64,000 nt of DNA, from positions 1-64,000 of the IMG/VR virus record IMGVR_UViG_3300032287_003113. One strand, 5' to 3'. Each line of letters opens with the position of its first letter. The first letter of the stretch is position 1. Made by a program: the position numbers and the translations under genes. Below the pieces are notes generated by a model. That model saw only the letters and a program-made list of their open reading frames with translations, did no database searches and had not been told where the DNA came from. Of this stretch, positions 10,885 through 63,184 are shown in pieces.

Positions 10885-12507
<1,623 letters not shown>

Positions 12508-24939: not shown

Positions 24940-25116
24940 TTATCTGCCGCGACCGGCGGATTTTTTGGCTGGTTTGTTTGTGCTGACTTGACCGCCGTGT
25001 TTGGCGGCTTGTACATGTGCTGTTTTGGTTCCGGGCACTCGTGGATTGGCTGCTACAGCCTTGGCGGCGTTGGCCATGTTGATAAAAGGATTTTTGGATT
25101 TTTTAGTGTCTGTCAT
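24940..25116 (-). CDS. Small basic Lys/Ala-rich protein (58 aa)
   Basis: MTDTKKSKNPFINMANAAKAV...SAGRGR. Confidence 0.55.
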   Translation of the reverse strand: MTDTKKSKNPFINMANAAKAVAANPRVPGTKTAHVQAAKHGGQVSTNKPAKKSAGRGR

Positions 25117-25118
25117 AA

Positions 25119-25607
25119 TTAGAAAGTGTATTTAAAATTCATTCCGGTATAAGTTGCTTTGTCGTAAGTTCCTTGTTGCCATAAAAATGTGCTTATACAA
25201 GCACTAAATTTGGTTTCATCAAATCTTCTGCATACTTGTCCGAATACCATTGCTTTGGTTTCGTGGTTCCATCTAGATGTTTGATACCCGGTTGAAATCT
25301 GTGGTGTCAAGTGTATACTCCAGTTGTTTTTTGACCATACATCAAATGTGGACACAAGACTTTTAGCAGTTCTTCCCATACTGTTATTGTTTACTTTGAC
25401 TCCGATGGCAATGCCATCTGTAAAATAATATCCAACACCAACACCAAAATTCATGTTGTCTCCACCAAAGGAAGCACGAGTGGTCTCTTTTTCCCAGTGG
25501 TACCCAGGACCAATTGCTTGAATATACATATCGCCCTTGTTGCCGGCTGATGCCAAATTGGAAATTGTTAGAGCACTCAAAAACAGCAAAAAATAAATTT
25601 TTTTCAT
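25119..25607 (-). CDS. Small outer-membrane beta-barrel protein (PagP-like layout)
   Basis: Signal peptide, alternating aromatic strands, YH..N.N.G.G.GY..NS pattern, C-terminal Phe. Confidence 0.55.
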   Translation of the reverse strand: MKKIYFLLFLSALTISNLASAGNKGDMYIQAIGPGYHWEKETTRASFGGDNMNFGVGVGYYFTDGIAIGVKVNNNSMGRTAKSLVSTFDVWSKNNWSIHLTPQISTGYQTSRWNHETKAMVFGQVCRRFDETKFSACISTFLWQQGTYDKATYTGMNFKYTF

Positions 25608-25637
25608 TTTATATCTCAATTAGTTTATCGAGTTTAA

Positions 25638-25666
25638 ATTATACATTAAAATTTATTATAGGTCAA
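25638..25666 (-). promoter_or_regulatory. sigma70-type promoter
   Basis: TTGACC-N17-TATAAT. Confidence 0.75.
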
Positions 25667-25670
25667 CCTA

Positions 25671-25744
25671 TGGTGCCCCTTGACAGAATCGAACTGCCAA
25701 TTGATGATTACAAATCAACTGTTATACCATTTAACTAAAGGGGC
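25671..25744 (-). tRNA. tRNA-Thr(UGU)
   Basis: Cloverleaf, loop TT-TGT-AA, GTTCGA, encoded CCA. Confidence 0.92.
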
Positions 25745-25769
25745 CGTATAAAACTGTATTTTACTTGTT

Positions 25770-26297
25770 TTAGTTGGCTTTGTCAATGAGATCGGTTAAA
25801 ACAGCGTTACCCGATACTTTTCTGTATCTGTGCGATTGACTTTTAAGTATCTCCAATGGAGCACTTTCTTTAAAAGGGTTGTGCCAAATACGTTCTGGTT
25901 CGCCGTTGTTAATAATAATCACATATTGCCAGTATCTGGCCAAATCAAATGTTTCTTTTTTGTACTTATAATGTTCTGCCAATGCTTGTACAAATGCCAT
26001 GTCTCTGTCAGGTAGCCCTATTAAGGTTGGTGCTCTCTTTTCAATGTGCGGCCCTATTAACCAATCCGTTGAGTCAACTACATAAATTTTGTCAATGCCT
26101 AATTCTTTAAACTGAGCGTAGTTACTTGTAAAACTGTCTAGTTGTAACCCTGAACACATTGTACGAAAATTTGTTAAAGAAAAAACAATCACACGGAGAT
26201 TGGCAAACAGATCATCATAATCAAATGTTGCTATCTGATTATGATGAAATGTTTTAAATGTTAGTTGTTTAAGTGTTTGTTGAAACAGTGAGTTCAC
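25770..26297 (-). CDS. Redoxin/Prx5-like protein (divergent)
   Basis: VIVFSL..FRTMCS (cf. FTPTCS), ELGIDKIYVV, LPD. Confidence 0.55.
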   Translation of the reverse strand: MNSLFQQTLKQLTFKTFHHNQIATFDYDDLFANLRVIVFSLTNFRTMCSGLQLDSFTSNYAQFKELGIDKIYVVDSTDWLIGPHIEKRAPTLIGLPDRDMAFVQALAEHYKYKKETFDLARYWQYVIIINNGEPERIWHNPFKESAPLEILKSQSHRYRKVSGNAVLTDLIDKAN

Positions 26298-26300
26298 AAA

Positions 26301-27287
26301 TTATGCTTTGATAATTCCGTCGATTAGGCCTGGATAGAAGAAGTCGCGATACTTGTCGTATAGCGGAGCAACAGCTTGTTTGAATTTATCTGTATCTTCT
26401 TTGTTTAGTTCTGTGTAAGTTACGCCAATGTCGCTGTGATCTTTTTTAGCAGCAAACGCTTCAGCTTCCTCAACTGACCACTTGCGTTCTAGGCGACTAG
26501 CGTATTTGCATGCTTCGCTAAACTTGGCTTGTTCATCTTCGCTTAATGTAGCTAAGAATTTGTTGCCAATAATAATACTAGTCAAGAACAAATTGTGTTT
26601 GGTGTTGACCATGTACCTCTTGCTTGTATTCTTGAACTGTGCTAGGTAACGTGGAATAGTTGTTTCGAGAGCATCGGCACCAATGCCTTCTTGTTTGAAA
26701 AAGTCTGGGTCAAGATATAGATCTCGCATTGAAAAAACTTGCGGAATAGCACCAATGGCTTCGCAAGTGTCAACAGTTACAGGATTATTTGTTGTGGCGA
26801 ACCCAATACCGCTTAGACTATCTAAATCGCTGATTGGTTTTTCGCTAACGATACAGCGGAATCCACCTGAATATGTAAACTCCATACCTATAGCTGGACT
26901 TTTGTCTTTTAGGCCGTCTAACATCTTACGACCAATTGGGCCTTCTAGTACACGTTTTGCATGATCGTGATCTTGGAAAATAAACGGCATTTCCAATGCC
27001 AAAAACTCCGGGCTATGCCAACGAGCTAAATCAACAACATGCATTTGACTCATTTGAATATCGCCGGAGTCAATTAACATCATTGGGTCAGCTTTAAAAT
27101 ATAATGATGAATCTCTCATTTTTTTGTCAGGATATTTGTTGCTGTATTCTTTTAAAGTAAAAATTTCTACTTCAAATTTGCCGTCGGTTAATTCGGCAAT
27201 TTTTTCTTTAAATGCTTCGGCTGTGCGTAGGAACAAATTTATAGGTTCGTGTGCGATTAACCAGGTGATTTTTTTCTTTTGATTCAT
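26301..27287 (-). CDS. TRAP DctP-family solute-binding protein without signal peptide
   Basis: F.E.I.ELTDGKFEVEIF, GDIQM, LEMPFIFQD.DHA, GGFR. Confidence 0.8.
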   Translation of the reverse strand: MNQKKKITWLIAHEPINLFLRTAEAFKEKIAELTDGKFEVEIFTLKEYSNKYPDKKMRDSSLYFKADPMMLIDSGDIQMSQMHVVDLARWHSPEFLALEMPFIFQDHDHAKRVLEGPIGRKMLDGLKDKSPAIGMEFTYSGGFRCIVSEKPISDLDSLSGIGFATTNNPVTVDTCEAIGAIPQVFSMRDLYLDPDFFKQEGIGADALETTIPRYLAQFKNTSKRYMVNTKHNLFLTSIIIGNKFLATLSEDEQAKFSEACKYASRLERKWSVEEAEAFAAKKDHSDIGVTYTELNKEDTDKFKQAVAPLYDKYRDFFYPGLIDGIIKA

Positions 27288-27340
27288 GGGATTCTCCAAT
27301 AGGATTTTGTATTATATATTTATACTTGCGCCTAGGATTC

Positions 27341-27591
27341 AATAAGTTTGGGCACATTAAAATCTGCTTTTCGACTGTGGACCACAATGCCAACGGGTCG
27401 CTATCCCGCATTAAATGGCTTGCTCTCCCGAGCATTTTTCATGGAATCTCGATCGCTGTTGCTGTTTTAAAATTGCTTGTACCCTCGGGAGTACCCGATT
27501 TAACATGCCATGCCACGGGGCCAATACTACCTACTGCAACAGGACTACCACAAGTATCAGATGGTCGCCACACCATGTGCCCAAACTTATT
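27341..27591 (-). ncRNA. Candidate ~250-nt structured ncRNA
   Basis: Perfect 17-bp terminal inverted repeat, several internal helices, own promoter. Confidence 0.65.
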
Positions 27592-27603
27592 AACTCGTAT
27601 ACT

Positions 27604-27632
27604 AGTATACACTATATGTCTATGTTATGCAA
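27604..27632 (-). promoter_or_regulatory. sigma70-type promoter for the ncRNA candidate
   Basis: TTGCAT-N17-TATACT. Confidence 0.6.
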
Positions 27633-28008
27633 CCCAGCCCTGTCCGGAAATTGCATGGAACCAGGGATAAAATGAGCTGGGGATATCAAACTGCCATGTA
27701 CCTTCCTGATCAATCCATGCTGTTGGTGGCTGTGCCAAATGTTGATATCGTGGTAATACTTCTGTGCCGTTTACCGTTAATAGTTTGATCTCCACTGCAC
27801 CGCCGTTTGCGTCTACCACTGTACATTTTAAGTTTATAGGGCTAAACAAATCTATACTATAGTTAGTGTCTAGGTCCGTTATCAAATGTCCATTGAGACG
27901 CATACGATAATGTATGTTGCCGTGGGCAACTATGACCAATCGTACTTGCAATTGATCCGAGGTTTTAATATCCAATACGTCGGAGAAAGTGTTTATATCT
28001 TGGTGCAT
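27625..28008 (-). CDS. Hypothetical protein
   Basis: 127 aa; ends FYPWFHAISGQGW; overlaps the radical SAM gene. Confidence 0.55.
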   Translation of the reverse strand: MHQDINTFSDVLDIKTSDQLQVRLVIVAHGNIHYRMRLNGHLITDLDTNYSIDLFSPINLKCTVVDANGGAVEIKLLTVNGTEVLPRYQHLAQPPTAWIDQEGTWQFDIPSSFYPWFHAISGQGWVA

Positions 28009-29260
28009 AATCTAGTATCGTGTTGTTCCTGATTGTTTCAAAACTTTTTAAGAAACTGACTAATTCTTTCAGTGATTCCTCTGCATCTGCAGGCGGGGTG
28101 TATGTTTTAACAAACTCCAGGTACTCAGTGGCCAACTGTGCAATAATCTCGTGACTTAAATCACTTCTGCGAGTATTCACTTGCGGAGTATACGATCCTA
28201 ATCGATCAACCACAGCCTGTAACTTTGCAACGGTTTCTTGTCTGATATCGTCTGGCATCAGTTCCATACGCAAACAACGTGGTTGGTGCAATATGTTACA
28301 GCTCTCGGCGATAATGTTGTGTTCGATCATGAACTCAAAAACTTGGTCCAGTTCGCTGATAGTAAACAAGTTAGGAGTGATACGTAGTTCTAGTTTTAAT
28401 CCGGGATTACGATCACGCAAGGCCACAAACTTGAGAATGTTTGCCAAGATCTGATCAGTAGGTCCTGGATAACGCACATAATCGTTTAATGACGTAACTG
28501 ACTCTATACTGATACCTAGATGAAACTCTTGGAATCTAGGTATCAATTGTTCTATACGTTCATCGTATATTGTGCCGTTGGTAGTTGTGCCAACTATTAG
28601 ATCTTGTCCATCCAAGTGCTCGCAAATGTCGTAGAAGGCTTGATTATATAATGTTTCTCCACCCAGGAAGTGTATGTAACGTATGTATGGAAACGATTTT
28701 AACTCTGCAACAAAGCGATTGACTGTTGCTGAATCTTCAGTCCAAGACTGATACGGCTTGGGTTCAGCAAATAATCGACTATCCAGCTTGTTTAATTTTT
28801 TATAGTCTGCAACAAGACGTGAGCTTGCTGTGGGGTCGCACATGATACAGGCACTATTACAAGTATTACCTAGGTCTATTTGTAAATCTGTTGGAAAATG
28901 TGGGCTGGCACCCGCATGACTGTTGCTGTATTCAAATACAGGCAAGTGTGGGCTAGAACGAAAGGTTAATGGAAACTCTGCAAGACCAATAGCACTTTTG
29001 TTTAGTTGTCTAACACGACCCGAAAGTTTTCCAAACTGATCTTGGTAGTAACAAGGCTCACACTCTTTGGGTTTGTTGCCGGCTAATAGTTGTTGACGCA
29101 GGTCTCTCATGGGCCCACTGTTGTAAAAATCCATCAGCGAAGTTGTGCGTATGTTGAAGTCGGTAGCACCGTTTTTGCTCCAGCGACACACATCATAACT
29201 ACCATCGTAAGTTAATCTAATGTGGAACCAGGGACTTGAACAGAATGTGTTTTTTAACAT
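27965..29260 (-). CDS. Radical SAM protein with N-terminal twitch-like domain
   Basis: FCSSPW...C...CEPC; CNSACIMC; LGGETL. Confidence 0.88.
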   Translation of the reverse strand: MLKNTFCSSPWFHIRLTYDGSYDVCRWSKNGATDFNIRTTSLMDFYNSGPMRDLRQQLLAGNKPKECEPCYYQDQFGKLSGRVRQLNKSAIGLAEFPLTFRSSPHLPVFEYSNSHAGASPHFPTDLQIDLGNTCNSACIMCDPTASSRLVADYKKLNKLDSRLFAEPKPYQSWTEDSATVNRFVAELKSFPYIRYIHFLGGETLYNQAFYDICEHLDGQDLIVGTTTNGTIYDERIEQLIPRFQEFHLGISIESVTSLNDYVRYPGPTDQILANILKFVALRDRNPGLKLELRITPNLFTISELDQVFEFMIEHNIIAESCNILHQPRCLRMELMPDDIRQETVAKLQAVVDRLGSYTPQVNTRRSDLSHEIIAQLATEYLEFVKTYTPPADAEESLKELVSFLKSFETIRNNTILDYAPRYKHFLRRIGY

Positions 29261-29265
29261 ATATT

Positions 29266-29355
29266 TGGCGGAGAGTCAGGGATTCGAACCCTGGATAATA
29301 TTGCTACTATGCCGGTTTAGTAGACCGGTGCCTTCAGCCGCTCGGCCAACTCTCC
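29266..29355 (-). tRNA. tRNA-Ser(ACU), unusual A34 anticodon
   Basis: Long variable arm, G73, CCGGT-CTACTAA-ACCGG, CCA end. Confidence 0.9.
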
Positions 29356-29382
29356 ATAAATACTTTTTTATAAAGGCAAAAC

Positions 29383-29658
29383 ATGAAAAAATTAATATTT
29401 CTATTGGCAACATTCTTTTATGTTTCTGCCATGGCTTTTACTACTCAAAAACCTGTTGACTGTTTTGGAACACCTGAAGTTACCAAAATGCTACGAGAAG
29501 AATTCAACGAAGTCATCATATTTGACAGTATCAACAACCTGACCGGCAAAAGCAGAATTTCTTTGTTTGTAAATTCTAAAACTGGAACATGGACCTTGGT
29601 TGAATACGACAACGACAATGCCTGCATTTTAGGTGCTGGTCAAAGTCGTTCCACCTGA
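29383..29658 (+). CDS. Small secreted protein
   Basis: Signal peptide, two Cys, TGTWTLVE...ACIL. Confidence 0.65.
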   Translation: MKKLIFLLATFFYVSAMAFTTQKPVDCFGTPEVTKMLREEFNEVIIFDSINNLTGKSRISLFVNSKTGTWTLVEYDNDNACILGAGQSRST

Positions 29659-38363: not shown

Positions 38364-38439
38364 TGGTGCCCTGGGTAGGATTCGAACCCACAATGTCCGC
38401 TCGGTAAAGCGGTGACTATACCATTTTGTCTACCAGGGT
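38364..38439 (-). tRNA. Non-canonical tRNA (6-nt anticodon loop, identity uncertain)
   Basis: T-arm GTGGGTTCGAATCCTAC, CCA end, anticodon arm CCGCT-TTACCG-AGCGG, A1:C72 mismatch. Confidence 0.7.
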
Positions 38440-41526: not shown

Positions 41527-42438
41527 TTATTTGTCCAGTTTAACTGTAGCACTCAAACGGCGCCATAGTACCAGCTGACTGTTGTACCAGTTGTCTAGCT
41601 CAGAATCTGGAATTTGATTGTTAGGAATACAAGTATCTGCGGCATTGGCATCACGTACACTTTTGCTACGTGCAGCTTCTACAAAAATCTTGCGAATTTC
41701 ACGAAACTTTTCTTCAGGAAATTTGCGTGGAATAAAGATCTGTTGCGAGCTACTCATGTCTGCAATTGCCGGTGCAAATCCTTGATTTTTCAACAAGGGA
41801 ATACCTTTAATACTTTCTTTGCCGGTCATGCCCAACCAATAAACCCGTTTGGTAGCGTCTGGCTTTGTGTACTGCTCGCTATCGCCAATGAATCCCACAG
41901 CAAAATCAGTTTGCCCACCCAAGACATTTAACAATGCTTCGTTGGTGCTTTTAAACGGAACAATCTGCATGTTTGGATATTGTGCAGCCACTTGCAAGGC
42001 TACCAGGTGCGTGGTTGCCCCAAGTCCACTGATACCAATGTTTAACTTGGCGTTTCGAGGAACATCCTTCCATGTTTTATACTTTGTGCTTGTGATAACA
42101 AACGGTGCAATACACATGGGCATTAGGCTTCTAAAGTCGGCCATGTTATGACTTTCCGTTGGAAACAGGTTGGGACGGATAAATCCTGCCGAACTGTTGA
42201 TCCAGATTGAGTTGGGAGTGTTTAACACATGGTTGGCTGCAACTGTGCCGCCTGCGCCAGGTTTAGCTTCAAAGATGAATGTGTATTTGTTTTGTAACTT
42301 GTTACTTTCGTCGGCTAGTGTGCGATAGAAGTTTGCTGCAATGTCAGCTGGAGACCAAGAATAATACATAACAATGTTTTCTTTGGCTGTTGCTGTTAAT
42401 GTAAATGTGGCTAGTAGTGCAACCAATAGTTTTTTCAT
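41527..42438 (-). CDS. Bug/TctC-family substrate-binding protein
   Basis: Signal peptide MKKLLVALL..., EAKPGAGG, G.G...HL, VPFK, VLGGQTD. Confidence 0.82.
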   Translation of the reverse strand: MKKLLVALLATFTLTATAKENIVMYYSWSPADIAANFYRTLADESNKLQNKYTFIFEAKPGAGGTVAANHVLNTPNSIWINSSAGFIRPNLFPTESHNMADFRSLMPMCIAPFVITSTKYKTWKDVPRNAKLNIGISGLGATTHLVALQVAAQYPNMQIVPFKSTNEALLNVLGGQTDFAVGFIGDSEQYTKPDATKRVYWLGMTGKESIKGIPLLKNQGFAPAIADMSSSQQIFIPRKFPEEKFREIRKIFVEAARSKSVRDANAADTCIPNNQIPDSELDNWYNSQLVLWRRLSATVKLDK

Positions 42439-42448
42439 TTGATTTTCC

Positions 42449-43639
42449 TTAAAATTTATAGTGTACGTTACGACCAGAGTCTTGATATACTGCATCGCCC
42501 AAGTAATAAAATGGACTGATAAATCCCACAAAGCCCACTGCTCGACCCATTTCGTAATTGAAATACTTGGCGTCAATCGAATCGGTTAATAATTTATGCC
42601 CAGCTTGCCATGCTCGGTAAGCATGAGTATCCTGAAAGTTTGTGTAAAACCAATAGTCCATTTCGTTATAAAAACTGTTGGTGGGCTTGCTGGTTTGGAA
42701 CGTTGTAGGATCGTAGTCGGGATAAATCAGGGGTTTAACAATGTGTTCGAATGTGGTACGTTGTGCAAAACTGTAGTTGGGCCAACGTACCAAGTGCTGT
42801 AGATATTTATTTGATTCTTGGTTGAACCAGTTTTTTATTGTGTGTGCTTGTTTGTTGACCAGGTCTGGCAAGTCTGGCGCCCAAAAGAAATACACATTGG
42901 CAATGTTGGTGTAGTGTTTGATGTCAGGGTTGGCAGCATTGGCCTGTATGTCCATGAAGTACAGATACCACTTTGAATCTCGGATACAGACCTTGGGCTT
43001 GTCAACACCCCATAACATACATATTCGCTTACCAGAGTCTAGCAATAGTTTATGTTCGTGTACTGCATCAACTGTGTGTTTGAACGGATGCCCGGGTTGG
43101 AAATAGTCTCTAGTTTTAAACACCCATGACTCATCATGTTCACTGGCCAGCATGTCCTCACTGTAGTCGTGTACTGTAATTTTGACTTGAGGATAGTTGG
43201 TAGCAATCCATTCTAGTGTAGGTCTGGCAGCATACTCCCATTCACTCAGTGTGTTCTCCGGTTTGGTGTTGAATGGATCTGCTGATACATTCTTTTCACC
43301 TGTTTTGGGATAACGAAATACCACTTCGTCTAACGGAATGTTATTGAGTAAAAACGAATACAATACTGTGTTGCCATCAGCACCGCCACTTAGTTCTAAA
43401 CGAATGTAATCGTATTCATCTCTAATTTGCTGTGCCCGTTGCCGATACAACTGTTGTAGATCAGTTTCAGGTTCTGTTAGCCAATCATGTGCGTCAAATA
43501 CTGTGCGGTTAAAATGCCACTCAGGAAAGACGTTGGTTTTTGTACCCGCAATTAGGGCTTCTACCTTGCTGTAGTATCGGGTATCTCCAACTTGGTAAAA
43601 GCCTAATTTAGGATTTTGTTCAATGGTGTACTGCATCAA
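42449..43639 (-). CDS. PP-loop (ANH) protein, paralog B
   Basis: SGGADG; shares LYRQRAQQ.RDEYDYIR, ENTLSEWE, WGVDKP and FQT.KPTN with 37067-38362. Confidence 0.7.
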   Translation of the reverse strand: MMQYTIEQNPKLGFYQVGDTRYYSKVEALIAGTKTNVFPEWHFNRTVFDAHDWLTEPETDLQQLYRQRAQQIRDEYDYIRLELSGGADGNTVLYSFLLNNIPLDEVVFRYPKTGEKNVSADPFNTKPENTLSEWEYAARPTLEWIATNYPQVKITVHDYSEDMLASEHDESWVFKTRDYFQPGHPFKHTVDAVHEHKLLLDSGKRICMLWGVDKPKVCIRDSKWYLYFMDIQANAANPDIKHYTNIANVYFFWAPDLPDLVNKQAHTIKNWFNQESNKYLQHLVRWPNYSFAQRTTFEHIVKPLIYPDYDPTTFQTSKPTNSFYNEMDYWFYTNFQDTHAYRAWQAGHKLLTDSIDAKYFNYEMGRAVGFVGFISPFYYLGDAVYQDSGRNVHYKF

Positions 43640-48433: not shown

Positions 48434-48885
48434 ACCACAATGTCTTCCATTCCGGCTGTGCGTAGTCTGACCACATGTCCCAACATGAAGTTCTTTGACT
48501 CAATGCCTTTCATGACGCCCAGCCAGCGATTGCGTAACAAGGCTACTTCATTGATAATAGTTTCCATGTCGACCACTTCATCCTCGGCTTCGGCATACTT
48601 TTCGGCATCTCTTGATGTTAATGCTCTAGCATAGGCTTCTAAATACTTTTTATAATGACGTTGGCGGATTTTACGTAATTGTATGTTAAGAAATTCTAGC
48701 ACAGCTTCAATCTCTTGCAGTTGATTAAATCTGTGTTCAGTCATGCCTGGCAAGTCGGACAACTCTTTTTCTACGCGACCACGTATTTTAATTTCTGTTT
48801 TGGCTGACGTCATCTCGCCTTCGTAGTAGTCGATGAATTCAGGAATAACGCTTAGGTCAGCTACAATTCGATTATAAAACATCAA
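48430..48885 (-). CDS. uvsY: UvsY-like recombination mediator
   Basis: Helical ~150 aa, YLE.Y...LT..D..KY, LGHVVRLRTAG; near uvsX and gp32. Confidence 0.7.
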   Translation of the reverse strand: MMFYNRIVADLSVIPEFIDYYEGEMTSAKTEIKIRGRVEKELSDLPGMTEHRFNQLQEIEAVLEFLNIQLRKIRQRHYKKYLEAYARALTSRDAEKYAEAEDEVVDMETIINEVALLRNRWLGVMKGIESKNFMLGHVVRLRTAGMEDIVV

Positions 48886-50119
48886 GGACTCCGGTTAGCC
48901 AAGGAAAAGTTTCACGCCAGTTGGTGTTGCGTCTACGATCAAGTTCGTCAAGATAAGTACGCAACTTGTTGATTTCGGTGGGATTTTTTTTGGTACTAGC
49001 AATTTGTTGTCTAACACCTTGCATATACTTACGTGCTTCCTGTTGTTGCCAAGTGTCTGCAGGCATAACTTCTAGCACCTGTGCAAAGTACGGATCTAGC
49101 AGTTCGGAATCAAAGATGTCTGGGTTCATGTAAGTGGGTGTGTTTGCGGTTATCAAATGATGCCCTATTTCTCTATGTGGTCTAAATGTGTTTATGTAAT
49201 TGATCAATGCTGGCATGGTAGGCACAGCCAATGCAGTGACCACTTGGTTTATGTTCAAAGTTATCCAACGTTGATTGACCAAATATTCAAAATTCTTTTT
49301 CCATTTTTCTAAATCCAAGCCCGATCTAATATACTCTTGTTCTGGACCCCAACAATCTATACTGGCAGTCACTTCAAAACGTTTGATCTTGCGTTCAGCA
49401 ACCAAATGTTTGATACGTTCTACATGCTCTTGCAATCGTTTATTATCGATCATCAAGTTACTTACTACATTAAATTCCAAATCTTTGTTACTATGATTAT
49501 ACAGGAAATCCAAACAAGTGTCAAATTGTGCTTGATAAAATGGTTCTCCGCCCAACACATGAAATCTGCGTACAGTCAAATAATTATCGTCTAGCCAGGC
49601 CCATAACTGTTCAGTCAGCAGGGCCTTGTCTGGATGCGGCCGATATTGGTTGTCAATTACAACACCGCCCAATTCAAATCTGCCGTGTTGATCATTTTCG
49701 TGTTTGATGCGACTGCTAAACCCATCGTGGCAATATATACATCGTAGATTACAGGTATTGTCAAAATATACTTCTACAATTCTAGGGGTGACCATGATGG
49801 CCTCAGGATCTGTGTCTAGTTCTGGCGGTGTTAGGTCTGGTATTGCCAGGTGTAGCATACGATCACTACTACCACCCGCACGTTCTATTTTTTCACAGTA
49901 ATCGCAACCACCTGAGGGCCATGCACCCAACAACATGGTTTGCCGATCTTGTAATTTTTTAGCAGTATTATGAAACTGATCAAACGATTCAGTTGATAGC
50001 GAACTTTTTTCTACTCTATGACAACTGTTGGTAGTTCCTTCGTACAAATAGATACTGCTCCAGGTCCATTTGAGCTGGCATGCAGTCGCTGTCTGTATTG
50101 GAAAATACTTGTGTTGCAT
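48872..50119 (-). CDS. Radical SAM protein (N-terminal twitch-like domain)
   Basis: CQLKW, SCH, CDYC; CNLRCIYC; LGGEPF. Confidence 0.88.
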   Translation of the reverse strand: MQHKYFPIQTATACQLKWTWSSIYLYEGTTNSCHRVEKSSLSTESFDQFHNTAKKLQDRQTMLLGAWPSGGCDYCEKIERAGGSSDRMLHLAIPDLTPPELDTDPEAIMVTPRIVEVYFDNTCNLRCIYCHDGFSSRIKHENDQHGRFELGGVVIDNQYRPHPDKALLTEQLWAWLDDNYLTVRRFHVLGGEPFYQAQFDTCLDFLYNHSNKDLEFNVVSNLMIDNKRLQEHVERIKHLVAERKIKRFEVTASIDCWGPEQEYIRSGLDLEKWKKNFEYLVNQRWITLNINQVVTALAVPTMPALINYINTFRPHREIGHHLITANTPTYMNPDIFDSELLDPYFAQVLEVMPADTWQQQEARKYMQGVRQQIASTKKNPTEINKLRTYLDELDRRRNTNWRETFPWLTGVLDVL

Positions 50120-50352
50120 TACCAGTTGGAATCTTCGCCTTCGTCATCATCTTGTTCGTCATCGGCGGTGTATTCTTTGAGAGCTTTTTTCAAGGTGCTG
50201 TCTGTTGTACCAAACTCCTTGAGTTCTTGATCTCCTAGCATATCTACCATGACACTCATTAGGTTATCGGCACACTCTTGACGGTCCTTTGCAGGAACAT
50301 ACTGTTTCATAATGGTATATAGTTCGCTTAAAACTTCTGTATCGATGGTCAT
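50119..50352 (-). CDS. Hypothetical acidic protein
   Basis: 77 aa with acidic tail. Confidence 0.55.
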   Translation of the reverse strand: MTIDTEVLSELYTIMKQYVPAKDRQECADNLMSVMVDMLGDQELKEFGTTDSTLKKALKEYTADDEQDDDEGEDSNW

Positions 50353-51485
50353 ACTTTTTCCTCTTTGTTAATCCACGTTGTAAAATTTTCTGGAAATACG
50401 TCTAACAAAAGTGATCTGCGATGAGCAAATTCTGTTAGATAATGCTTTAACTTGGTTTTTTGTTCCATTGTTGATTCTACTGCTAAAGTTTCTTTGATTT
50501 CTTGGTCATGATATTTATATTCAATTTGACATAACTGTGTCTTGGACTCAGGATCTAACACACTGGCACTTAGATATGCAGGATCGTTGCAGGGATTTAA
50601 CAAATCTTTGTCAGTTGAATATTCCCGTTGAAAATCATCGAATCCATGCACAGTTAAATTACTCAACACACTACAAAATCTATAGTCAAACTGTGCGGCT
50701 ATCAAATCCAAGTTACGTCTAAACTGATCCCAGGTATTACCATGCCTGTTAAATTCGTATAATGCACCTGTGTTTTCTGCACTGACAGTAAATGTAGTGC
50801 TTTTAGGTAACTGTGACAATATCTGTGTTAATCGCTTGGTATTAACTCCTAGGCCTGTAAAAATATCAACGGATCCTGTTAGTCCTGTTACCAACTCTGT
50901 TAGTCCATTGTATAAAAATGGCTCGCCACCGGTAATTTCTATTTGCTTGACTGTTTTAAATCTTTTTATTTCTGACAAAATAGTTTGGTAACTATCGCTG
51001 GCTTTTATAGCAGGTTGTCCTAGTTGTAACACAATTCTATCGTTGGCTGTGATTTGATATCTTGGCTCATCAAAATATGCACCGTGATCTTTAACATCAC
51101 GTAACCAAGCAGTACTGTACTGTTTACAGCAATAACTACAGGTTAGATTGCAATCGCTACCAACATTGATGTGTAACACTTGAGGACCAGCATAGATATC
51201 TGTGTGTGTTCTTTCTCCAGAATTCATCAGAGTACGTCGGCTGGGCAATCCACGACGTTCAGCTGACCAACAAGTATCTTCGCAACTTGCCACAGGCTCG
51301 TTGTTTAACATTGCTTGTCGTTCTTGTATTAGTACGGGCGTGTTAAACAACTGTCCTGGGTTATTTCTAAGCCAGGACAAGTCAATCTTGGTAGCTGTAG
51401 CAGCACAGCACGAATTCATAGTTCTTCGTTCAGGCTCTACAGTTAACCACCAAAATTTTTGCGAGCAATAATTACTCTGCGACAT
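50349..51485 (-). CDS. Radical SAM protein (N-terminal twitch-like domain)
   Basis: YCSQKF, SCC, CEDTC; CNLTCSYC; TGGEPF. Confidence 0.88.
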   Translation of the reverse strand: MSQSNYCSQKFWWLTVEPERRTMNSCCAATATKIDLSWLRNNPGQLFNTPVLIQERQAMLNNEPVASCEDTCWSAERRGLPSRRTLMNSGERTHTDIYAGPQVLHINVGSDCNLTCSYCCKQYSTAWLRDVKDHGAYFDEPRYQITANDRIVLQLGQPAIKASDSYQTILSEIKRFKTVKQIEITGGEPFLYNGLTELVTGLTGSVDIFTGLGVNTKRLTQILSQLPKSTTFTVSAENTGALYEFNRHGNTWDQFRRNLDLIAAQFDYRFCSVLSNLTVHGFDDFQREYSTDKDLLNPCNDPAYLSASVLDPESKTQLCQIEYKYHDQEIKETLAVESTMEQKTKLKHYLTEFAHRRSLLLDVFPENFTTWINKEEKV

Positions 51486-52593
51486 CAACCTCTTTTTTAG
51501 ACTTCTTTGGCTTGTCTTCAACCACTGCGTCTAATTCAGCTTCTAGTTCTTCAATGTCCACTGACTTCTGATGTGGATTGGCAACAAAATCTACCATGGC
51601 CTTGTCCAAGCATGAATCTTCGTTGCGTTCCCATGCCTTGCGAAACTTCTTGATAATTTCACCTGTAGCCAGTGTATACACCAGGCTGTTGCCTTCTTTC
51701 TTCAGCAAGTCTTTGCCTTCAAATAGGTCAACCAAACCCGAGTAAGGATTCATACCTTCTTCGTACGGAATCTTGACCTGAACAGATTCAAATGGTTTGG
51801 CATAGCGTGTTTTCATGATCTTGCAAGCGGCACGGATGCCTTTTACTTCTGAAATCTTGTTGCCATCCTCATCTTCTTTGAGTTTTAACTTACGCATAGC
51901 TACAACAATAGAGCTTGCATAGATAAAACCTTGTCCTCCTGATATTTTGTCGTCCGGATCAAACATGTCCTGTGACGCATAAGTGTGTGCTGTTGTTACT
52001 AGGCCAATATTCAAGCTACCAAACATGTTTACGCAATTACGTACCAGGGCGGCCAGTGCCTTGGGCTTACGACCCATGTCACCTTTCATGTCCCCTGCTT
52101 CGAATTGATTTACATCCGTGGGGGTAAGTAGCATACCCAACGAATCTACTACAAATAGTACTTTGGGACGTTGATCTTCTGGTAGTGTTTTGTATTCTTT
52201 GACAAACTCCGAGATCATCTTGCCCACATCATCGATCATGGCCATGTTTAGTTTGAGTAACTTGTCCTCACTGGTATCTACATTTAATGCATGTAGCCAT
52301 TTCTCGTCGAGTGCGTTTTCGCTATCAACCAGGATCACATAAATGCCTTGCTTTTGTGCATTGGCTACCAAGTTGCCCGAACAAATAAAACTTTTACCTG
52401 CGCCAGACTCGCCAGCAAACACAGTAACTTTACCTAGTGGAACACCTTTGTTAAAGTCTCCTGAAATTAGATAGTTGAGAGCATAGTTATTTGTACTGAT
52501 CCAATCTGTGGGATCGGTAAAGCCAACGCTGATACCGTCAATACTTTTGGTAATGCTCTTGCGAAATTTTGATACGTCAAATGGTTTAGCCAT
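51472..52593 (-). CDS. uvsX: UvsX/RecA-like recombinase
   Basis: GESGAGKS, DSENA, VVDSLG, ISGGQG, KTRYAKPF. Confidence 0.92.
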   Translation of the reverse strand: MAKPFDVSKFRKSITKSIDGISVGFTDPTDWISTNNYALNYLISGDFNKGVPLGKVTVFAGESGAGKSFICSGNLVANAQKQGIYVILVDSENALDEKWLHALNVDTSEDKLLKLNMAMIDDVGKMISEFVKEYKTLPEDQRPKVLFVVDSLGMLLTPTDVNQFEAGDMKGDMGRKPKALAALVRNCVNMFGSLNIGLVTTAHTYASQDMFDPDDKISGGQGFIYASSIVVAMRKLKLKEDEDGNKISEVKGIRAACKIMKTRYAKPFESVQVKIPYEEGMNPYSGLVDLFEGKDLLKKEGNSLVYTLATGEIIKKFRKAWERNEDSCLDKAMVDFVANPHQKSVDIEELEAELDAVVEDKPKKSKKEVDVAE

Positions 52594-61080: not shown

Positions 61081-62643
61081 TCAGATCATGATAAAGGGCA
61101 TGGGCACTATAAACTCGTTGCTGTCTTTGATTTCAGCATCCAGATTTGCATCATAGTTTTGTAGGGTTTGCATCATGCGTAGGGCTAGTAAAGTTGACAT
61201 AACTAGGTCGTCGGTTTCACCTATTTTGGCTGCAAAACTATTGCCATGAGCAACAAAGGTTTTTAACTCTGATATCAGAGCTTTACTAGCAATAATCATA
61301 CGGCGGGTTTCTACTAGACTCTTGAGCTTGGAACAAGCAGTTAATTTTGATTTGTTGGTAGTGTTAAATCCTTTGCGGAATCTGCGTACATTGCCGGCTC
61401 GGGCAGTTTCACTTAGGAATACCCCACGTATGTTTTCTTCGCCAATTTCTTCGATCACGACCAATGCGGCTTCGCCTAAGGTGTTGTTCTCTACGCTGTA
61501 GTAAACATTGTTTGGTGATCCGCTGGCATCAGATATATACTGACAAATTTCTTGCAAGATACGTACCTGACGCTGTATAGGAGTTTTGTTATCACGCCAC
61601 TCGGCCACTTGTTTAAGTCCAGGCATTTCAAATACTTGTAAGGCCGCAGGATCTCCACCGGTACCTAAACTGGGATCAAGTGCTACAAAGTAAGTGTGAT
61701 CTCGTTCAGGACGTTTGTACCAACGCACTTGGCCCTGTCGTTCAAACGGATCGATGCCCGACATCTCAGCCAGGTGCAAGGGATTGATTAAGGTCTCATC
61801 AAAGATAATAAATTCACATTCCATCTCACGACGGAAACGTTCTTCACCCAGTTGTGCTCGCATGTTTGCAGCCCAGGCTTCATCTCGTTCAGGATGTTCT
61901 TCCCATTTGCTACGGAATGCTTTGAATCCGTTGACACCCACTTCTGTTTCATTGCCGTTGATGTCAATGCACTTGTTGGCGCCACGCCAGATCTGTGCAA
62001 ATTGATCTTCGTCACTGTTTGGTGTGCTTGTGATAATACATTTACCACCAGTGGCCAAGGTAGGAGTAATGGAAGTCCAAAAGTCTGCGGCAATGGTGGG
62101 GCGAACAAACGCAAACTCGTCGCAGTATAGGAGTGATATACTCATGCCTCGTCCGGTGTTTTCTGTTGTGGTTTGACTTACTATGCGGCTACCATTTTCA
62201 AAGTCTAAGCTACCTTTGTTGTAACTGGTTACACCGGCTCGGATATAATCCGGACAGTTTTCATAAGCATAACGGACACGTTGCATGATCTCTTGAGCAC
62301 CTAGGTACTTGTGAGCAGCTACCAAGATGGTTGTATCTGGCACAAACATGGCATACCATAGCAAGTAGCCAGCGGCCGTGGTCGATTTGCCCGTTTGTCT
62401 TGGCATTAGGCTTATACTGAATCTATAATGATGATAAGACTCAATCAATCGTTCTTGGTATTCAAAAGGATGATATTGTATGGCACCGCGGGTAGGGTGT
62501 TGTATAAAGAAATAGTTCTTCATAAAGTAATCTGGGCCTGTTACAGGATCAGCACAGCGGGCTAACTCTAAGATCTGTTGCTCAGTGTAAGACATCCGTT
62601 TGTACGGTGCCTTGATAATTGCAGTCTCTAACTCTTTACTCAT
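61081..62643 (-). CDS. terL: Terminase large subunit (T4 gp17-like)
   Basis: YQ, PRQTGKS, GRG.S, YCDEFAF, ITSTPN, ALDPSLG, VENN, DDLVM. Confidence 0.95.
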   Translation of the reverse strand: MSKELETAIIKAPYKRMSYTEQQILELARCADPVTGPDYFMKNYFFIQHPTRGAIQYHPFEYQERLIESYHHYRFSISLMPRQTGKSTTAAGYLLWYAMFVPDTTILVAAHKYLGAQEIMQRVRYAYENCPDYIRAGVTSYNKGSLDFENGSRIVSQTTTENTGRGMSISLLYCDEFAFVRPTIAADFWTSITPTLATGGKCIITSTPNSDEDQFAQIWRGANKCIDINGNETEVGVNGFKAFRSKWEEHPERDEAWAANMRAQLGEERFRREMECEFIIFDETLINPLHLAEMSGIDPFERQGQVRWYKRPERDHTYFVALDPSLGTGGDPAALQVFEMPGLKQVAEWRDNKTPIQRQVRILQEICQYISDASGSPNNVYYSVENNTLGEAALVVIEEIGEENIRGVFLSETARAGNVRRFRKGFNTTNKSKLTACSKLKSLVETRRMIIASKALISELKTFVAHGNSFAAKIGETDDLVMSTLLALRMMQTLQNYDANLDAEIKDSNEFIVPMPFIMI

Positions 62644-62656
62644 ATAAGTATATTTA

Positions 62657-63184
62657 ATGTCAGATACATTGTTACTCAATCAAAATTACCAACCAATTAG
62701 TGTGCTACCCCTTAGTGTTATCAATTGGCAACACGCAATCAAACTCATGTACCTGGGTCGTGTTCATGTGTTGGAAACCTATCCCAATTGGATAGTACAC
62801 TCAGAACGCCTGGCTCTAAATGTGCCCAGTGTTTGTGTGACCCGAGACTACTTTCACTACAAACAGGCTGTTAAATTCAGCAGATATAATCTTTACATGC
62901 GAGACTTATTCAAGTGTCAATATTGTGATGATGTGTTTGACTACGAAGATCTGACCATTGATCATGTGAAACCTCGTAGCCTGGGTGGCAAAACAGTCTG
63001 GGAAAATTGTGTTACCAGTTGTAAAACTTGTAATCATGCCAAAGGCAGTCATTTGCTATTGCCCAAGGTAAAACCGTACAAACCAGATTATTATAGTCTA
63101 GTTGGACAATGGAAGAAAATGCCGTTTACAGTTAAACAAGATTCGTGGAATCAATACTTGGGGTTAGATAAGCGAGTAGCTTAA
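62657..63184 (+). CDS. HNH endonuclease
   Basis: LLLN..Y.P, RD..CQYC, TIDHV.P.S.GG, W.N.V..C..CN..K. Confidence 0.9.
   Translation: MSDTLLLNQNYQPISVLPLSVINWQHAIKLMYLGRVHVLETYPNWIVHSERLALNVPSVCVTRDYFHYKQAVKFSRYNLYMRDLFKCQYCDDVFDYEDLTIDHVKPRSLGGKTVWENCVTSCKTCNHAKGSHLLLPKVKPYKPDYYSLVGQWKKMPFTVKQDSWNQYLGLDKRVA

What the first reader, a model, noticed from the sequence alone, without database searches (positions are those of the whole stretch)
27341..27632. ~250-nt structured ncRNA candidate with its own promoter and a 17-bp closing helix
Seen: AATAAGTTTGGGCACAT (27341-27357) is the exact reverse complement of 27575-27591. A TTGCAT-N17-TATACT promoter (27604-27632, minus) would start transcription just before this helix. 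Inside are CTCCCGAG/CTCGGGAG (27425-32 with 27484-91), CTGTTGC/GCAACAG (27456-62 with 27536-42, crossing the first pair as a pseudoknot), hairpins at 27394-27408 and 27561-27576, and an alternative TGCTC-GGGA-GAGCA GNRA hairpin. No credible ORF covers it. I cannot assign a family. Inference: a stand-alone phage RNA (6S-like, divergent RNase P-like, retron-like or new) or a cis-regulator of the downstream dctP gene.
Basis: partly seen in the sequence, partly recalled or inferred. Interest (0 to 1): 0.82.

Follow-up and report, generated by a model that had tools for sequence, protein, structure and literature searches.

The report
New structured RNA in phage tRNA array
The flagged stretch is a real gene for a roughly 251-nucleotide, intricately folded non-coding RNA of a family not in Rfam, which sits inside the tRNA gene cluster of a group of uncultured freshwater jumbo phages and is detected in lake metatranscriptomes; its function is still unknown.

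Summary
The 17-nt inverted repeat is exact, and it closes a 251-nt element (27341-27591, minus strand).

I found 38 distinct homologues (61-100% identical) in freshwater viral and metagenome contigs. Homology starts and stops exactly at the closing helix. 97.9% of structure cells form standard pairs, against 35-41% when partners are slid, and 37 of 60 pairs show compensatory changes. G·U outnumbers A·C 245:10, which fixes the RNA strand. No reading frame is conserved.

The element always lies between tRNA-Ser (once Val) and tRNA-Thr on their strand. It sits either 4-6 nt behind the tRNA or behind its own promoter. The dctP gene is an optional cassette, so the element is not a dctP leader.

In three of four lake metatranscriptomes, contigs lie only on the element; the 1.6 kb upstream is silent.

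Rfam gives no family. A model of this RNA does not match T4 RNA C/D, E. coli 6S or PA5oct ncRNAs.

Verdict: a new family of stand-alone phage RNA in a tRNA island. The nearest in kind are T4 RNA C/D, ROOL and GOLLD. Maturation by tRNA-processing enzymes and action in trans are inferred; the function is unknown.

The parts
27341..27591 (-). The complete RNA gene, 251 nt. RNA position n corresponds to window coordinate 27592-n. Homology with all relatives begins and ends exactly here.
   Evidence: The covariance model R1 scores 267 bits here, with only one copy in the window.
27604..27632 (-). Sigma-70-type promoter, TTGCAT (27632-27627) - 17 nt - TATACT (27609-27604). The predicted start is about 5-7 nt before helix P1.
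   Evidence: Read from the sequence. Equivalent or better promoters stand at the same place in L007, L008, L017, L037, L039, L048 and L052. The start site is inferred, not mapped.
27575..27591 (-). P1 5' arm (RNA nt 1-17), the closing helix.
   Evidence: All 17 pairs are kept and 12-16 of them show compensatory changes. The basal 10 bp are nearly invariant in sequence.
27341..27357 (-). P1 3' arm (RNA nt 235-251).
27563..27574 (-). P1.1 hairpin, GGU[GUGGCG]ACC (nt 18-29). The stem is 3 bp and covaries. The hexaloop is invariant.
   Evidence: helix 3: 3 of 3 pairs with double changes. The loop is invariant also in the contigs found with patterns that did not contain it.
27548..27562 (-). 5' strands of P2 (AUCUG, nt 30-34) and P3 (ACUUGUGG, nt 37-44).
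   Evidence: P3 pair 39/216 has 17 double changes. P2 is almost invariant, so it is supported by pairing only.
27362..27380 (-). 3' strands of P3 (CCACAGU, nt 212-218) and P2 (CAGAU, nt 226-230), with the invariant junction CGAAAAG between them.
27456..27542 (-). Domain A (nt 50-136). It comprises P6 (27536-42 with 27456-62), P8 (GCCC/GGGU: 27518-21 with 27481-84), hairpin P9 (27503-13; GNRA-capped in most relatives) and hairpin P10 (UCGGG-UACU-CCCGA, 27485-98).
   Evidence: P6 has 5 of 5 pairs with double changes, P9 has 3 of 4, and P10's closing pair switches G-C/A-U 18:21. The P8-P10 module is the only part shared with the divergent RNA in L089.
27382..27444 (-). Domain B (nt 148-210). It comprises P11 (CCAUGA/UUGUGG), GNRA hairpin P12 (27421-34), P13 (GCCA/UGGC) and hairpin P14 (27394-27410).
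   Evidence: helices 11-13 with double changes. P12 on the + strand is what the terminator scan listed at 27421-27434; I take that to be a by-product of the hairpin.
29266..29355 (-). tRNA-Ser(ACT), the upstream neighbour in the array. Here it is separated from the RNA by a 1.67-kb cassette; in other genomes it lies 4-6 nt upstream.
25671..25744 (-). tRNA-Thr(TGT), the downstream neighbour in the array. Here it is separated by the DctP-like and redoxin-like cassette; in other genomes it lies 17-24 nt downstream.

Best explanation
**What it is.** This is the gene of a stable, independently folding, trans-acting non-coding RNA of about 251 nt. It belongs to an undescribed family that is a fixed member of the tRNA gene array (tRNA-Ser - RNA - tRNA-Thr) in a clade of uncultured freshwater jumbo phages. 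These phages are distantly related to Pseudomonas phage PA5oct.

**Shown.**
- The RNA strand is the window's minus strand.
- The fold is a 17-bp closing helix, then P1.1, P2 and P3, leading into two multi-helix domains. It has two GNRA-capped hairpins, an invariant UACU tetraloop and an invariant GUGGCG hexaloop. The fold is maintained by compensatory changes.
- No reading frame is conserved.
- There is one copy per locus, always in the same array position.
- Metatranscriptome contigs are confined to the element.

**Inferred.**
- Where the element directly follows tRNA-Ser-CCA it is made as part of the tRNA precursor. It would be released by the host's tRNA-processing nucleases: RNase P at the 5' end of tRNA-Thr, and endo/exonucleases behind tRNA-Ser.
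- Where a gene cassette separates it from the tRNA, as in this window, it uses its own sigma-70 promoter.
- Helix P1 holds both ends together and would stop exonucleolytic trimming, so a compact particle accumulates.
- Its many invariant junction and loop nucleotides point to a defined tertiary fold that binds a partner (protein, tRNA or itself), rather than to antisense regulation.

**My working guess for the partner** (low confidence) is the translation/tRNA system. The invariant loop UGGCG is complementary to the CGCCA-3' end carried by the phage's own tRNA-Ser, Trp, Glu and Asp.
For: **Homologues and fold.**
- 38 distinct homologues, with homology bounded by P1.
- 97.9% of cells paired, against 35-41% for slid controls.
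- 37 of 60 pairs have double changes; 0 of 500 shuffles reach the observed values.
- 245 G·U cells against 10 A·C cells, and the RNA strand folds better in 37 of 37 sequences.

**Not coding.** No frame is conserved, and variable columns fall 55/56/57 across codon positions.

**Position.** Always between tRNA-Ser (or Val) and tRNA-Thr on the same strand, in four cassette arrangements. One copy per locus.

**Promoters.** Present upstream whenever the element is not tRNA-adjacent.

**Expression.**
- Metatranscriptome contigs of 119-213 nt lie wholly within 27349-27574 in X2, X3 and X4.
- Depth in X3 is 27.9, against 4.6 on dctP.
- Depth is zero over 27644-29251 in all four runs.

**Composition.** GC is 47-49%, against 31-43% in the flanks.

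**tRNA ends.** All phage tRNAs encode CCA. Ser, Trp, Glu and Asp end in CGCCA.
Against: - No function, partner or exact RNA ends were measured.
- Contigs carry no strand and no true ends. Their shared limits (27362 and 27574) may be assembly branch points.
- Run X1 shows dctP but not the RNA.
- The loop/CGCCA complementarity is 5 nt, is invariant (so it cannot be tested by covariation), and C72 is normally paired in the acceptor stem.
- The model R1 was built from fairly close relatives (effective sequence number 1.4), so distant membership in a known family cannot be fully excluded.
- The sequences share ancestry, which inflates shuffle-based significance.
Confidence: 0.85

Rival explanations
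1. It is a cis-acting leader or riboswitch that controls the downstream DctP-like gene.
For: The DctP-like gene starts about 55 nt after P1 here and in 21 related loci. No terminator lies between them, so read-through from the RNA's promoter into dctP is likely.
Against: In at least 12 loci tRNA-Thr follows within 17-54 nt and there is no dctP, yet the RNA is equally conserved. RNA-library contigs stop inside the element and do not run into dctP. There is no alternative terminator/antiterminator or RBS-sequestering pairing.
Confidence: 0.03
2. It is a DNA-level element: a small mobile element with terminal inverted repeats, a recombination or cassette-insertion site, or an origin.
For: The basal 10 bp of both arms are almost invariant in sequence. 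Optional gene cassettes sit immediately on either side of it.
Against: There is a single copy per locus, always at the same array position. The G·U to A·C asymmetry of 245:10 is expected for RNA from one strand, not for DNA hairpins. Compensatory changes occur throughout the internal helices. Expression is confined to the element.
Confidence: 0.03
3. It is a very divergent member of a known RNA family (6S, RNase P, SRP, tmRNA, Y RNA, T-box, group I/II intron fragment, ROOL/GOLLD).
For: - It has a long end-to-end closing helix, as in 6S, Y and RNase P RNAs.
- Short strings resemble E. coli 6S RNA: GUGGCG, and a UCGG...CCGA hairpin followed by UUAAAACUGCGA.
- Its location beside tRNAs is like that of ROOL and GOLLD.
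Against: - Rfam 15 gives nothing above chance, even at E up to 10 on the element, and nothing at gathering score in the window or in 8 homologous loci.
- ARAGORN finds no tmRNA.
- R1 with filters off does not match E. coli ssrS.
- The architecture is multi-branched, not one irregular hairpin.
- No covariation-supported long-range pseudoknot was found.
Confidence: 0.05
4. It is only a processing or insulating module of the tRNA transcript (for example an RNase III stem). It would have no function of its own after cleavage.
For: It has a 17-bp perfect helix flanked by tRNAs, and a conserved A/U-rich spacer before tRNA-Thr.
Against: About 200 nt of interior carry many invariant loop and junction nucleotides and covarying helices, far more than a cleavage site needs. 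The interior accumulates in RNA libraries.
Confidence: 0.04

Closest known systems
Phage T4 RNA C and RNA D (species 1 and 2 RNAs; rnaC, rnaD)
   Same: They are stable small RNAs encoded on the tRNA strand inside a phage tRNA cluster, directly abutting a tRNA. They are transcribed from the tRNA region and their biological role is still unknown (PMC3014915).
   Different: They are 139 and 119 nt, against 251 nt here. R1 finds no similarity in the T4 region with filters off. They sit at the end of the array after tRNA-Arg, not between tRNA-Ser and tRNA-Thr.
ROOL and GOLLD RNAs
   Same: They are ornate, covariation-supported phage or prophage RNAs of unknown function, often near tRNA islands. GOLLD was first seen in lake metagenomes (10.1101/2024.12.08.627333 = PMC12286853).
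   Different: They are much larger; many GOLLD RNAs exceed 800 nt in that paper. There is no Rfam match here. They form RNA-only cages; nothing is known here about oligomers.
6S RNA
   Same: It has an end-to-end closing helix and acts in trans as a structured decoy. A few short strings are alike.
   Different: There is no covariance-model match in either direction. This RNA has a branched two-domain fold rather than a single hairpin with a central bubble.
T-box leaders and RNase P RNA (RNAs that grip tRNA)
   Same: This is a lead only. The invariant loop UGGC(G) could pair with GCCA-3'. In T-box leaders, a UGGN bulge pairs with NCCA; in RNase P RNA, the L15 GGU pairs with ACC (my knowledge; review PMC4919913).
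   Different: There is no Rfam match and no terminator/antiterminator. No P4 core was recognised by eye. It is not upstream of an aminoacyl-tRNA synthetase gene. tRNA binding is untested.
ncRNA001-004 of Pseudomonas jumbo phage PA5oct
   Same: PA5oct has the nearest large terminase subunit among cultured phages (53% identity). Its ncRNA001 is 236 nt and makes up 2.4-5% of phage reads (PMC7318152).
   Different: ncRNA001 and ncRNA002 are not in a tRNA array, and R1 matches only trivial hairpins there.

Membership tests
6S RNA | Match to the Rfam 6S covariance models | tested here: not met
   cmscan of 27200-27750 at E up to 10 lists only one chance hit, to an unrelated lncRNA. Gathering-score scans of the window and of 8 loci list only tRNAs.
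6S RNA | A single long irregular hairpin with a large central bubble | tested here: not met
   The consensus fold has 13 helices in two branched domains.
6S RNA | Binds sigma-70 RNA polymerase and templates pRNA | not testable with these tools
   Needs biochemistry.
RNase P RNA | Match to the Rfam RNase P models | tested here: not met
RNase P RNA | Long-range P4 pseudoknot with conserved CR-I/CR-V sequences | tested here: not met
   A scan of all column pairs found no covarying helix beyond the nested ones. The CR-I/CR-V consensus, recalled from memory, was not seen in the consensus sequence.
Retron msr-msd RNA | Adjacent reverse transcriptase gene | tested here: not met
   The neighbours are tRNAs, radical-SAM, DctP-like, redoxin-like and dCMP-deaminase genes, plus small ORFs. 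None that was annotated is a reverse transcriptase; most neighbour clusters were left unannotated. In 7 loci both direct neighbours are tRNAs.
Retron msr-msd RNA | Flanking inverted repeats (a1/a2) | tested here: met
   P1 is such a repeat, but this feature is not specific to retrons.
cis-regulatory leader / riboswitch | Constant position upstream of the same gene family, with an expression platform | tested here: not met
   The downstream neighbour is tRNA-Thr in at least 12 loci and dctP in 21. No terminator or RBS-sequestering alternative was found.
T4 RNA C / RNA D | Encoded within a phage tRNA cluster on the tRNA strand | tested here: met
T4 RNA C / RNA D | Sequence/structure homology | tested here: not met
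   R1 with filters off on T4 66-76 kb: the best hits are at most 9 bits, and are short hairpins outside or unrelated to rnaC/rnaD.
ROOL / GOLLD | Match to the Rfam models | tested here: not met
ROOL / GOLLD | Phage-borne, near tRNA islands | tested here: met
   The context of ROOL and GOLLD is taken from 10.1101/2024.12.08.627333.
ROOL / GOLLD | Homo-oligomeric RNA-only cage | not testable with these tools
   Needs native gels or cryo-EM.
tmRNA | tRNA-like ends plus a tag reading frame | tested here: not met
   ARAGORN reports no tmRNA. Rfam gives none.
Y RNA (Ro60-associated) | Rfam match, and a neighbouring Ro60/Rsr gene | tested here: inconclusive
   There is no Rfam match. No TROVE domain was seen among the 28 window proteins scanned, but not all ORFs of the phage were examined.
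Protein-coding gene | Conserved open frame with codon-position bias | tested here: not met

The most novel reading that the evidence does not exclude
The RNA is a new kind of tRNA-handling RNA made by jumbo phages: a compact ribonucleoprotein-free particle, or a ribozyme. It would grip the acceptor end of G73-CCA tRNAs through the invariant UGGCG loop, with the conserved UGAAA/CGAAA junctions forming the rest of the docking surface. In this way it could shield, sort or sense phage tRNAs during infection, for example against host nucleases that attack tRNA. The divergent RNA in L089, which keeps only the P8-P10 module, would then mark a wider superfamily of RNAs resident in tRNA arrays.
Probability: 0.12. 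Interest if true: 0.88.

Novelty: new variant of a known kind. Interest (0 to 1): 0.62.

Why it matters
Structured RNAs that live in phage tRNA islands (T4 RNA C/D, ROOL, GOLLD) are a long-standing puzzle: they are conserved and abundant, and none has a known function. This element adds a third, unrelated and much smaller family to that group.

Several things make it tractable:
- It has an unusually clean comparative signal and is detected in natural lake samples.
- It has a fixed array position, between tRNA-Ser and tRNA-Thr.
- It has a short list of invariant loops that can be mutated.
- At 251 nt it is suited to chemical probing, pull-downs and structure determination.
- The cassette tRNA-Ser - RNA - tRNA-Thr can be expressed in a laboratory bacterium to test processing.

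If it proves to act on tRNAs or on the translation apparatus, it would show a new RNA-based layer of host take-over by jumbo phages. If not, it is still a well-defined new RNA family for Rfam.

Tried and rejected
1. **Rfam.** The gathering-score scan of the window, the E ≤ 10 scan of the element, and the gathering-score scan of 8 homologous loci gave only tRNAs and one chance hit.
2. **Deposited phage genomes.**
   - blastn of the locus and of the RNA alone against 50,697 genomes gave nothing real.
3. **Cellular genomes.**
   - A pattern scan of 185,579 species' genomes gave 25 hits, all chance matches. They lie inside GC-rich stretches with no other resemblance to the RNA, mostly one locus shared by Rhizobium species.
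   - None has the 5' motif. R1 did not match the three that were tested.
   - Not conserved.
5. **Extra helices or pseudoknots.**
   - A search over all column pairs returned only the known helices.
6. **Homology to T4 rnaC/rnaD, E. coli 6S and PA5oct ncRNA001/002 by covariance model.**
   - None found.
7. **Coding potential.**
   - The + strand 114-aa and 86-aa ORFs and the minus-strand 57-aa ORF have no Pfam or PHROG match and are not conserved.
8. **A conserved protein partner next to the RNA.**
   - Clustering of all neighbouring ORFs gave no RNA-related gene that always accompanies it.
9. **L090 and the scan hits L026 and L050.**
   - Chance matches.
10. **A published catalogue.**
    - Candidate structured RNAs from IMG/VR (PMC10690425) lists structures of 29-151 nt only.
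    - Its supplementary files are not held, so I could not check whether a fragment of this RNA is listed there.

Full report
**1. The observation**

- The 17-nt repeat AATAAGTTTGGGCACAT (27341-27357) and its exact reverse complement (27575-27591) are there. The 17-mer has no other copy in the window, even with three mismatches.
- The region is a 325-nt gap on the minus strand. It lies between a 127-aa ORF (27625-28008) and a DctP-family gene (26301-27287/27299). Its GC is 47-49%, against 31-43% beside it.
Its -35 is weak, so the consensus scan did not list it.
- The minus strand folds to -95.3 kcal/mol (z = -2.7); the plus strand folds less well.

**2. Relatives**

- No deposited phage genome matches.
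- Exact-pattern scans of IMG/VR and of JGI metagenomes found the element in many other contigs. After removing duplicates there are 38 distinct sequences of 251-266 nt, 61-100% identical to each other.
- Two IMG/VR contigs of 219,879 and 356,865 bp carry the window's own locus or a 99% identical one. The large terminase subunit in the window is 53% identical to that of Pseudomonas jumbo phage PA5oct. These are therefore jumbo phages. The RNA libraries that hold the sequence are labelled freshwater.
- In every alignment, similarity begins at the first base of the closing helix and ends at its last base. The flanks are unrelated unless the same neighbouring gene is present.
- A scan of one genome for each of 185,579 bacterial and archaeal species gave only chance matches.

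**3. It is an RNA, and the fold is selected**

- RNAalifold on 12 and then 37 sequences gives a nested fold. A covariance model (R1) re-finds every homologue at 200-299 bits. The next best hit is 14.5 bits, and there is one copy per locus.
- On the model alignment, 97.9% of cells form standard pairs, against 35-41% when partners are slid by 1-3 columns. 37 of 60 pairs show changes on both sides. No shuffle out of 500 reaches the observed values.
- G·U cells outnumber A·C cells 245 to 10, and the minus-strand RNA folds better than its complement in 37 of 37 sequences. The structure therefore belongs to the transcript of the window's minus strand, not to DNA.
- No reading frame is open in all sequences. 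Lengths differ by 1, 2, 8, 9, 10, 11 and 15 nt. Variable columns are spread 55/56/57 over the three codon positions. The ORFs across it have no family match.

**4. Anatomy**

RNA position n corresponds to window coordinate 27592-n.

| Element | RNA positions | Notes |
|---|---|---|
| P1 | 1-17 / 235-251 | Basal 10 bp almost invariant in sequence; distal 7 bp covary freely |
| P1.1 | 18-29 | GGU[GUGGCG]ACC; loop invariant |
| P2 | 30-34 / 226-230 | AUCUG/CAGAU |
| P3 | 37-44 / 212-218 | Invariant CGAAAAG on the 3' side between P3 and P2 |
| Domain A: P8 | 71-74 / 108-111 | GCCC/GGGU |
| Domain A: P9 | 79-89 | Hairpin, GNRA-capped in most members |
| Domain A: P10 | 94-107 | UCGGR-UACU-YCCGA |
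| Domain B: P11 | 148-153 / 205-210 | CCAUGA/UUGUGG |
| Domain B: P12 | 158-171 | GNRA hairpin |
| Domain B: P13 | 172-175 / 200-203 | GCCA/UGGC |
| Domain B: P14 | 182-198 | Hairpin |

- Long stretches of the junctions are invariant or nearly so.
No pseudoknot has comparative support.

**5. Context**

- In all 37 loci examined the RNA lies on the tRNA strand. A tRNA-Ser lies upstream (tRNA-Val, Met or Phe in three loci) wherever the contig reaches that far, and tRNA-Thr(TGT) lies downstream wherever the contig reaches that far.
- Four arrangements occur:
  - The RNA is 4-6 nt (sometimes 44-57 nt) behind the tRNA and 17-24 nt (54 nt in one locus) ahead of tRNA-Thr.
  - The same, with a cassette of about 1.6 kb (DctP-like plus redoxin-like genes) between the RNA and tRNA-Thr.
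  - The same, with a cassette of about 1.67 kb (radical-SAM/SPASM gene plus the 127-aa ORF) between tRNA-Ser and the RNA.
  - Both cassettes, as in this window.
- The ancestral unit is thus tRNA-Ser - RNA - tRNA-Thr. The protein genes are optional insertions, and the RNA cannot be a dedicated dctP leader.
- Where a cassette or a spacer separates it from the tRNA, a sigma-70-type promoter stands 5-12 nt before P1:
  - L008: TTGACA-17-TATACT
  - L017: TTGACT-17-TATAAT
  - L037, L039, L048, L052: TTGCAT-17-TATAAT
  - the window: TTGCAT-17-TATACT
- No RNA-related protein gene consistently accompanies it.

**6. Expression**

- Four freshwater metatranscriptomes hold parts of the stretch.
- Laid on 25500-29500, runs X2, X3 and X4 give contigs of 119-213 nt that lie entirely inside the element (27349-27574).
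  - In X3 the depth is 27.9, against 4.6 on dctP and 5.4 on tRNA-Thr.
- No run has anything on 27644-29251. The two tRNAs are covered.
- The variant letters are those of the 356-kb contig's strain.
- Run X1 shows dctP but not the RNA.
- Contigs have no strand and no true ends, and RNA libraries can carry DNA. The silent 1.6 kb beside the element argues against DNA carry-over. This is support for a discrete accumulating RNA, not proof of its ends.

**7. Comparison with known RNAs**

- Rfam 15 gives no family at any threshold used, and ARAGORN finds no tmRNA.
- R1 with filters off finds nothing in the T4 tRNA region that holds rnaC and rnaD, in E. coli ssrS, or at PA5oct ncRNA001/002.
- Short strings recall E. 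coli 6S RNA, but the architecture differs and neither model matches.
- By kind, the nearest are:
  - T4 RNA C/D, which are transcribed from the tRNA region and have unknown roles (PMC3014915).
  - ROOL and GOLLD, which are phage RNAs often near tRNA islands and form RNA-only cages (10.1101/2024.12.08.627333).
- By sequence and structure it is a family of its own.
- One further contig (L089) has a 311-nt, strongly structured gap (z = -4.9) between tRNA-Tyr and tRNA-Ala. It shares only the P8-P10 module with this family. A wider superfamily is possible.

**8. How it probably works**

- Shown: a conserved, strand-specific, compact fold; a fixed place in the tRNA array; its own promoter where needed; and presence in RNA libraries.
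- Inferred:
  - Release from the tRNA precursor by RNase P, at the 5' end of tRNA-Thr.
  - Release behind tRNA-Ser-CCA by the nucleases that finish that tRNA.
  - Protection of both ends by P1.
  - Action in trans through a defined tertiary structure.
- The partner is unknown.
- One lead: the invariant loop UGGCG is the complement of CGCCA-3', which is the encoded end of the phage's tRNA-Ser, Trp, Glu and Asp. This recalls how T-box leaders and RNase P RNA hold the acceptor end. It rests on five invariant bases and on my memory of those systems, so I give it about 0.1.

**9. Verdict**

It is a new, well-supported family of phage non-coding RNA that resides in a tRNA array.
- The cis-regulator, pseudoknot and named-family readings are rejected.
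- The function remains open.

Noticed in passing
window 29266-29355 (-); related loci: The tRNA-Ser upstream of the RNA has the anticodon ACT (A34), which is unusual for bacteria-type tRNAs. In related phages the tRNA-Ser at the same place has GCT (12-13 loci) or ACT (16 loci). Position 34 is therefore polymorphic between G and A.
   Followed up: partly
window 38364-38439 (-): ARAGORN calls a tRNA with an undetermined identity and a two-base 'anticodon (ac)'. Rfam scores it as tRNA at only 41 bits. It is possibly a tRNA with an odd anticodon loop.
   Followed up: no
window 27625-29260 and 25770-27299; Two gene cassettes are present or absent independently among related phages, exactly on either side of the RNA. 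One holds the radical-SAM/SPASM gene and the 127-aa ORF; the other holds the DctP-like and redoxin-like genes. The spacers of the tRNA array seem to be insertion hot spots.
   Followed up: partly
window 26301-27299 (-) and 41527-42576 (-): The phage encodes two proteins of the solute-binding families of tripartite transporters (DctP, E = 4e-37; TctC, E = 7e-7). The DctP-like one starts MNQKKKITWLIAHEP, with no obvious signal peptide by eye.
   Followed up: no
window 27965-29260, 48872-50119, 50349-51521 (-): There are several radical-SAM genes in one 64-kb stretch. The one at 27965-29260 has an N-terminal SPASM-like domain and overlaps the start of a small ORF. This could be a peptide-modification cassette.
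   Followed up: no
window 10885-12504 (-); 61081-62679 (-): The window holds a phage-encoded GroEL-type chaperonin (PHROG E = 3e-182) and the large terminase subunit. The terminase is closest (53% identity) to Pseudomonas jumbo phage PA5oct and its relatives.
   Followed up: partly
L089 2037-2347 (-) (IMGVR_UViG_3300021952_000020): Another phage tRNA array (15 tRNAs in 4 kb) has a 311-nt, strongly structured gap (z = -4.9) between tRNA-Tyr and tRNA-Ala. It shares only the P8-P10 module (CCCCGUG ... AAUAUCGGAUACUUCCGAGGGUA) with the family described here.
   Followed up: partly
window 24940-25116 (-); L004 829-1005: A very basic protein of about 58 aa, ending KKSAGRGR, is conserved just downstream of tRNA-Thr in at least L004. 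Its function is unknown.
   Followed up: no
window 27362 and 27574: Contigs of two independent metatranscriptomes (X3, X4) begin and end at the same two positions: the last base of P2's 3' strand and the first base after P1's 5' arm. This could reflect assembly branch points between strains, or real RNA ends after removal of P1. Contigs cannot tell which.
   Followed up: no
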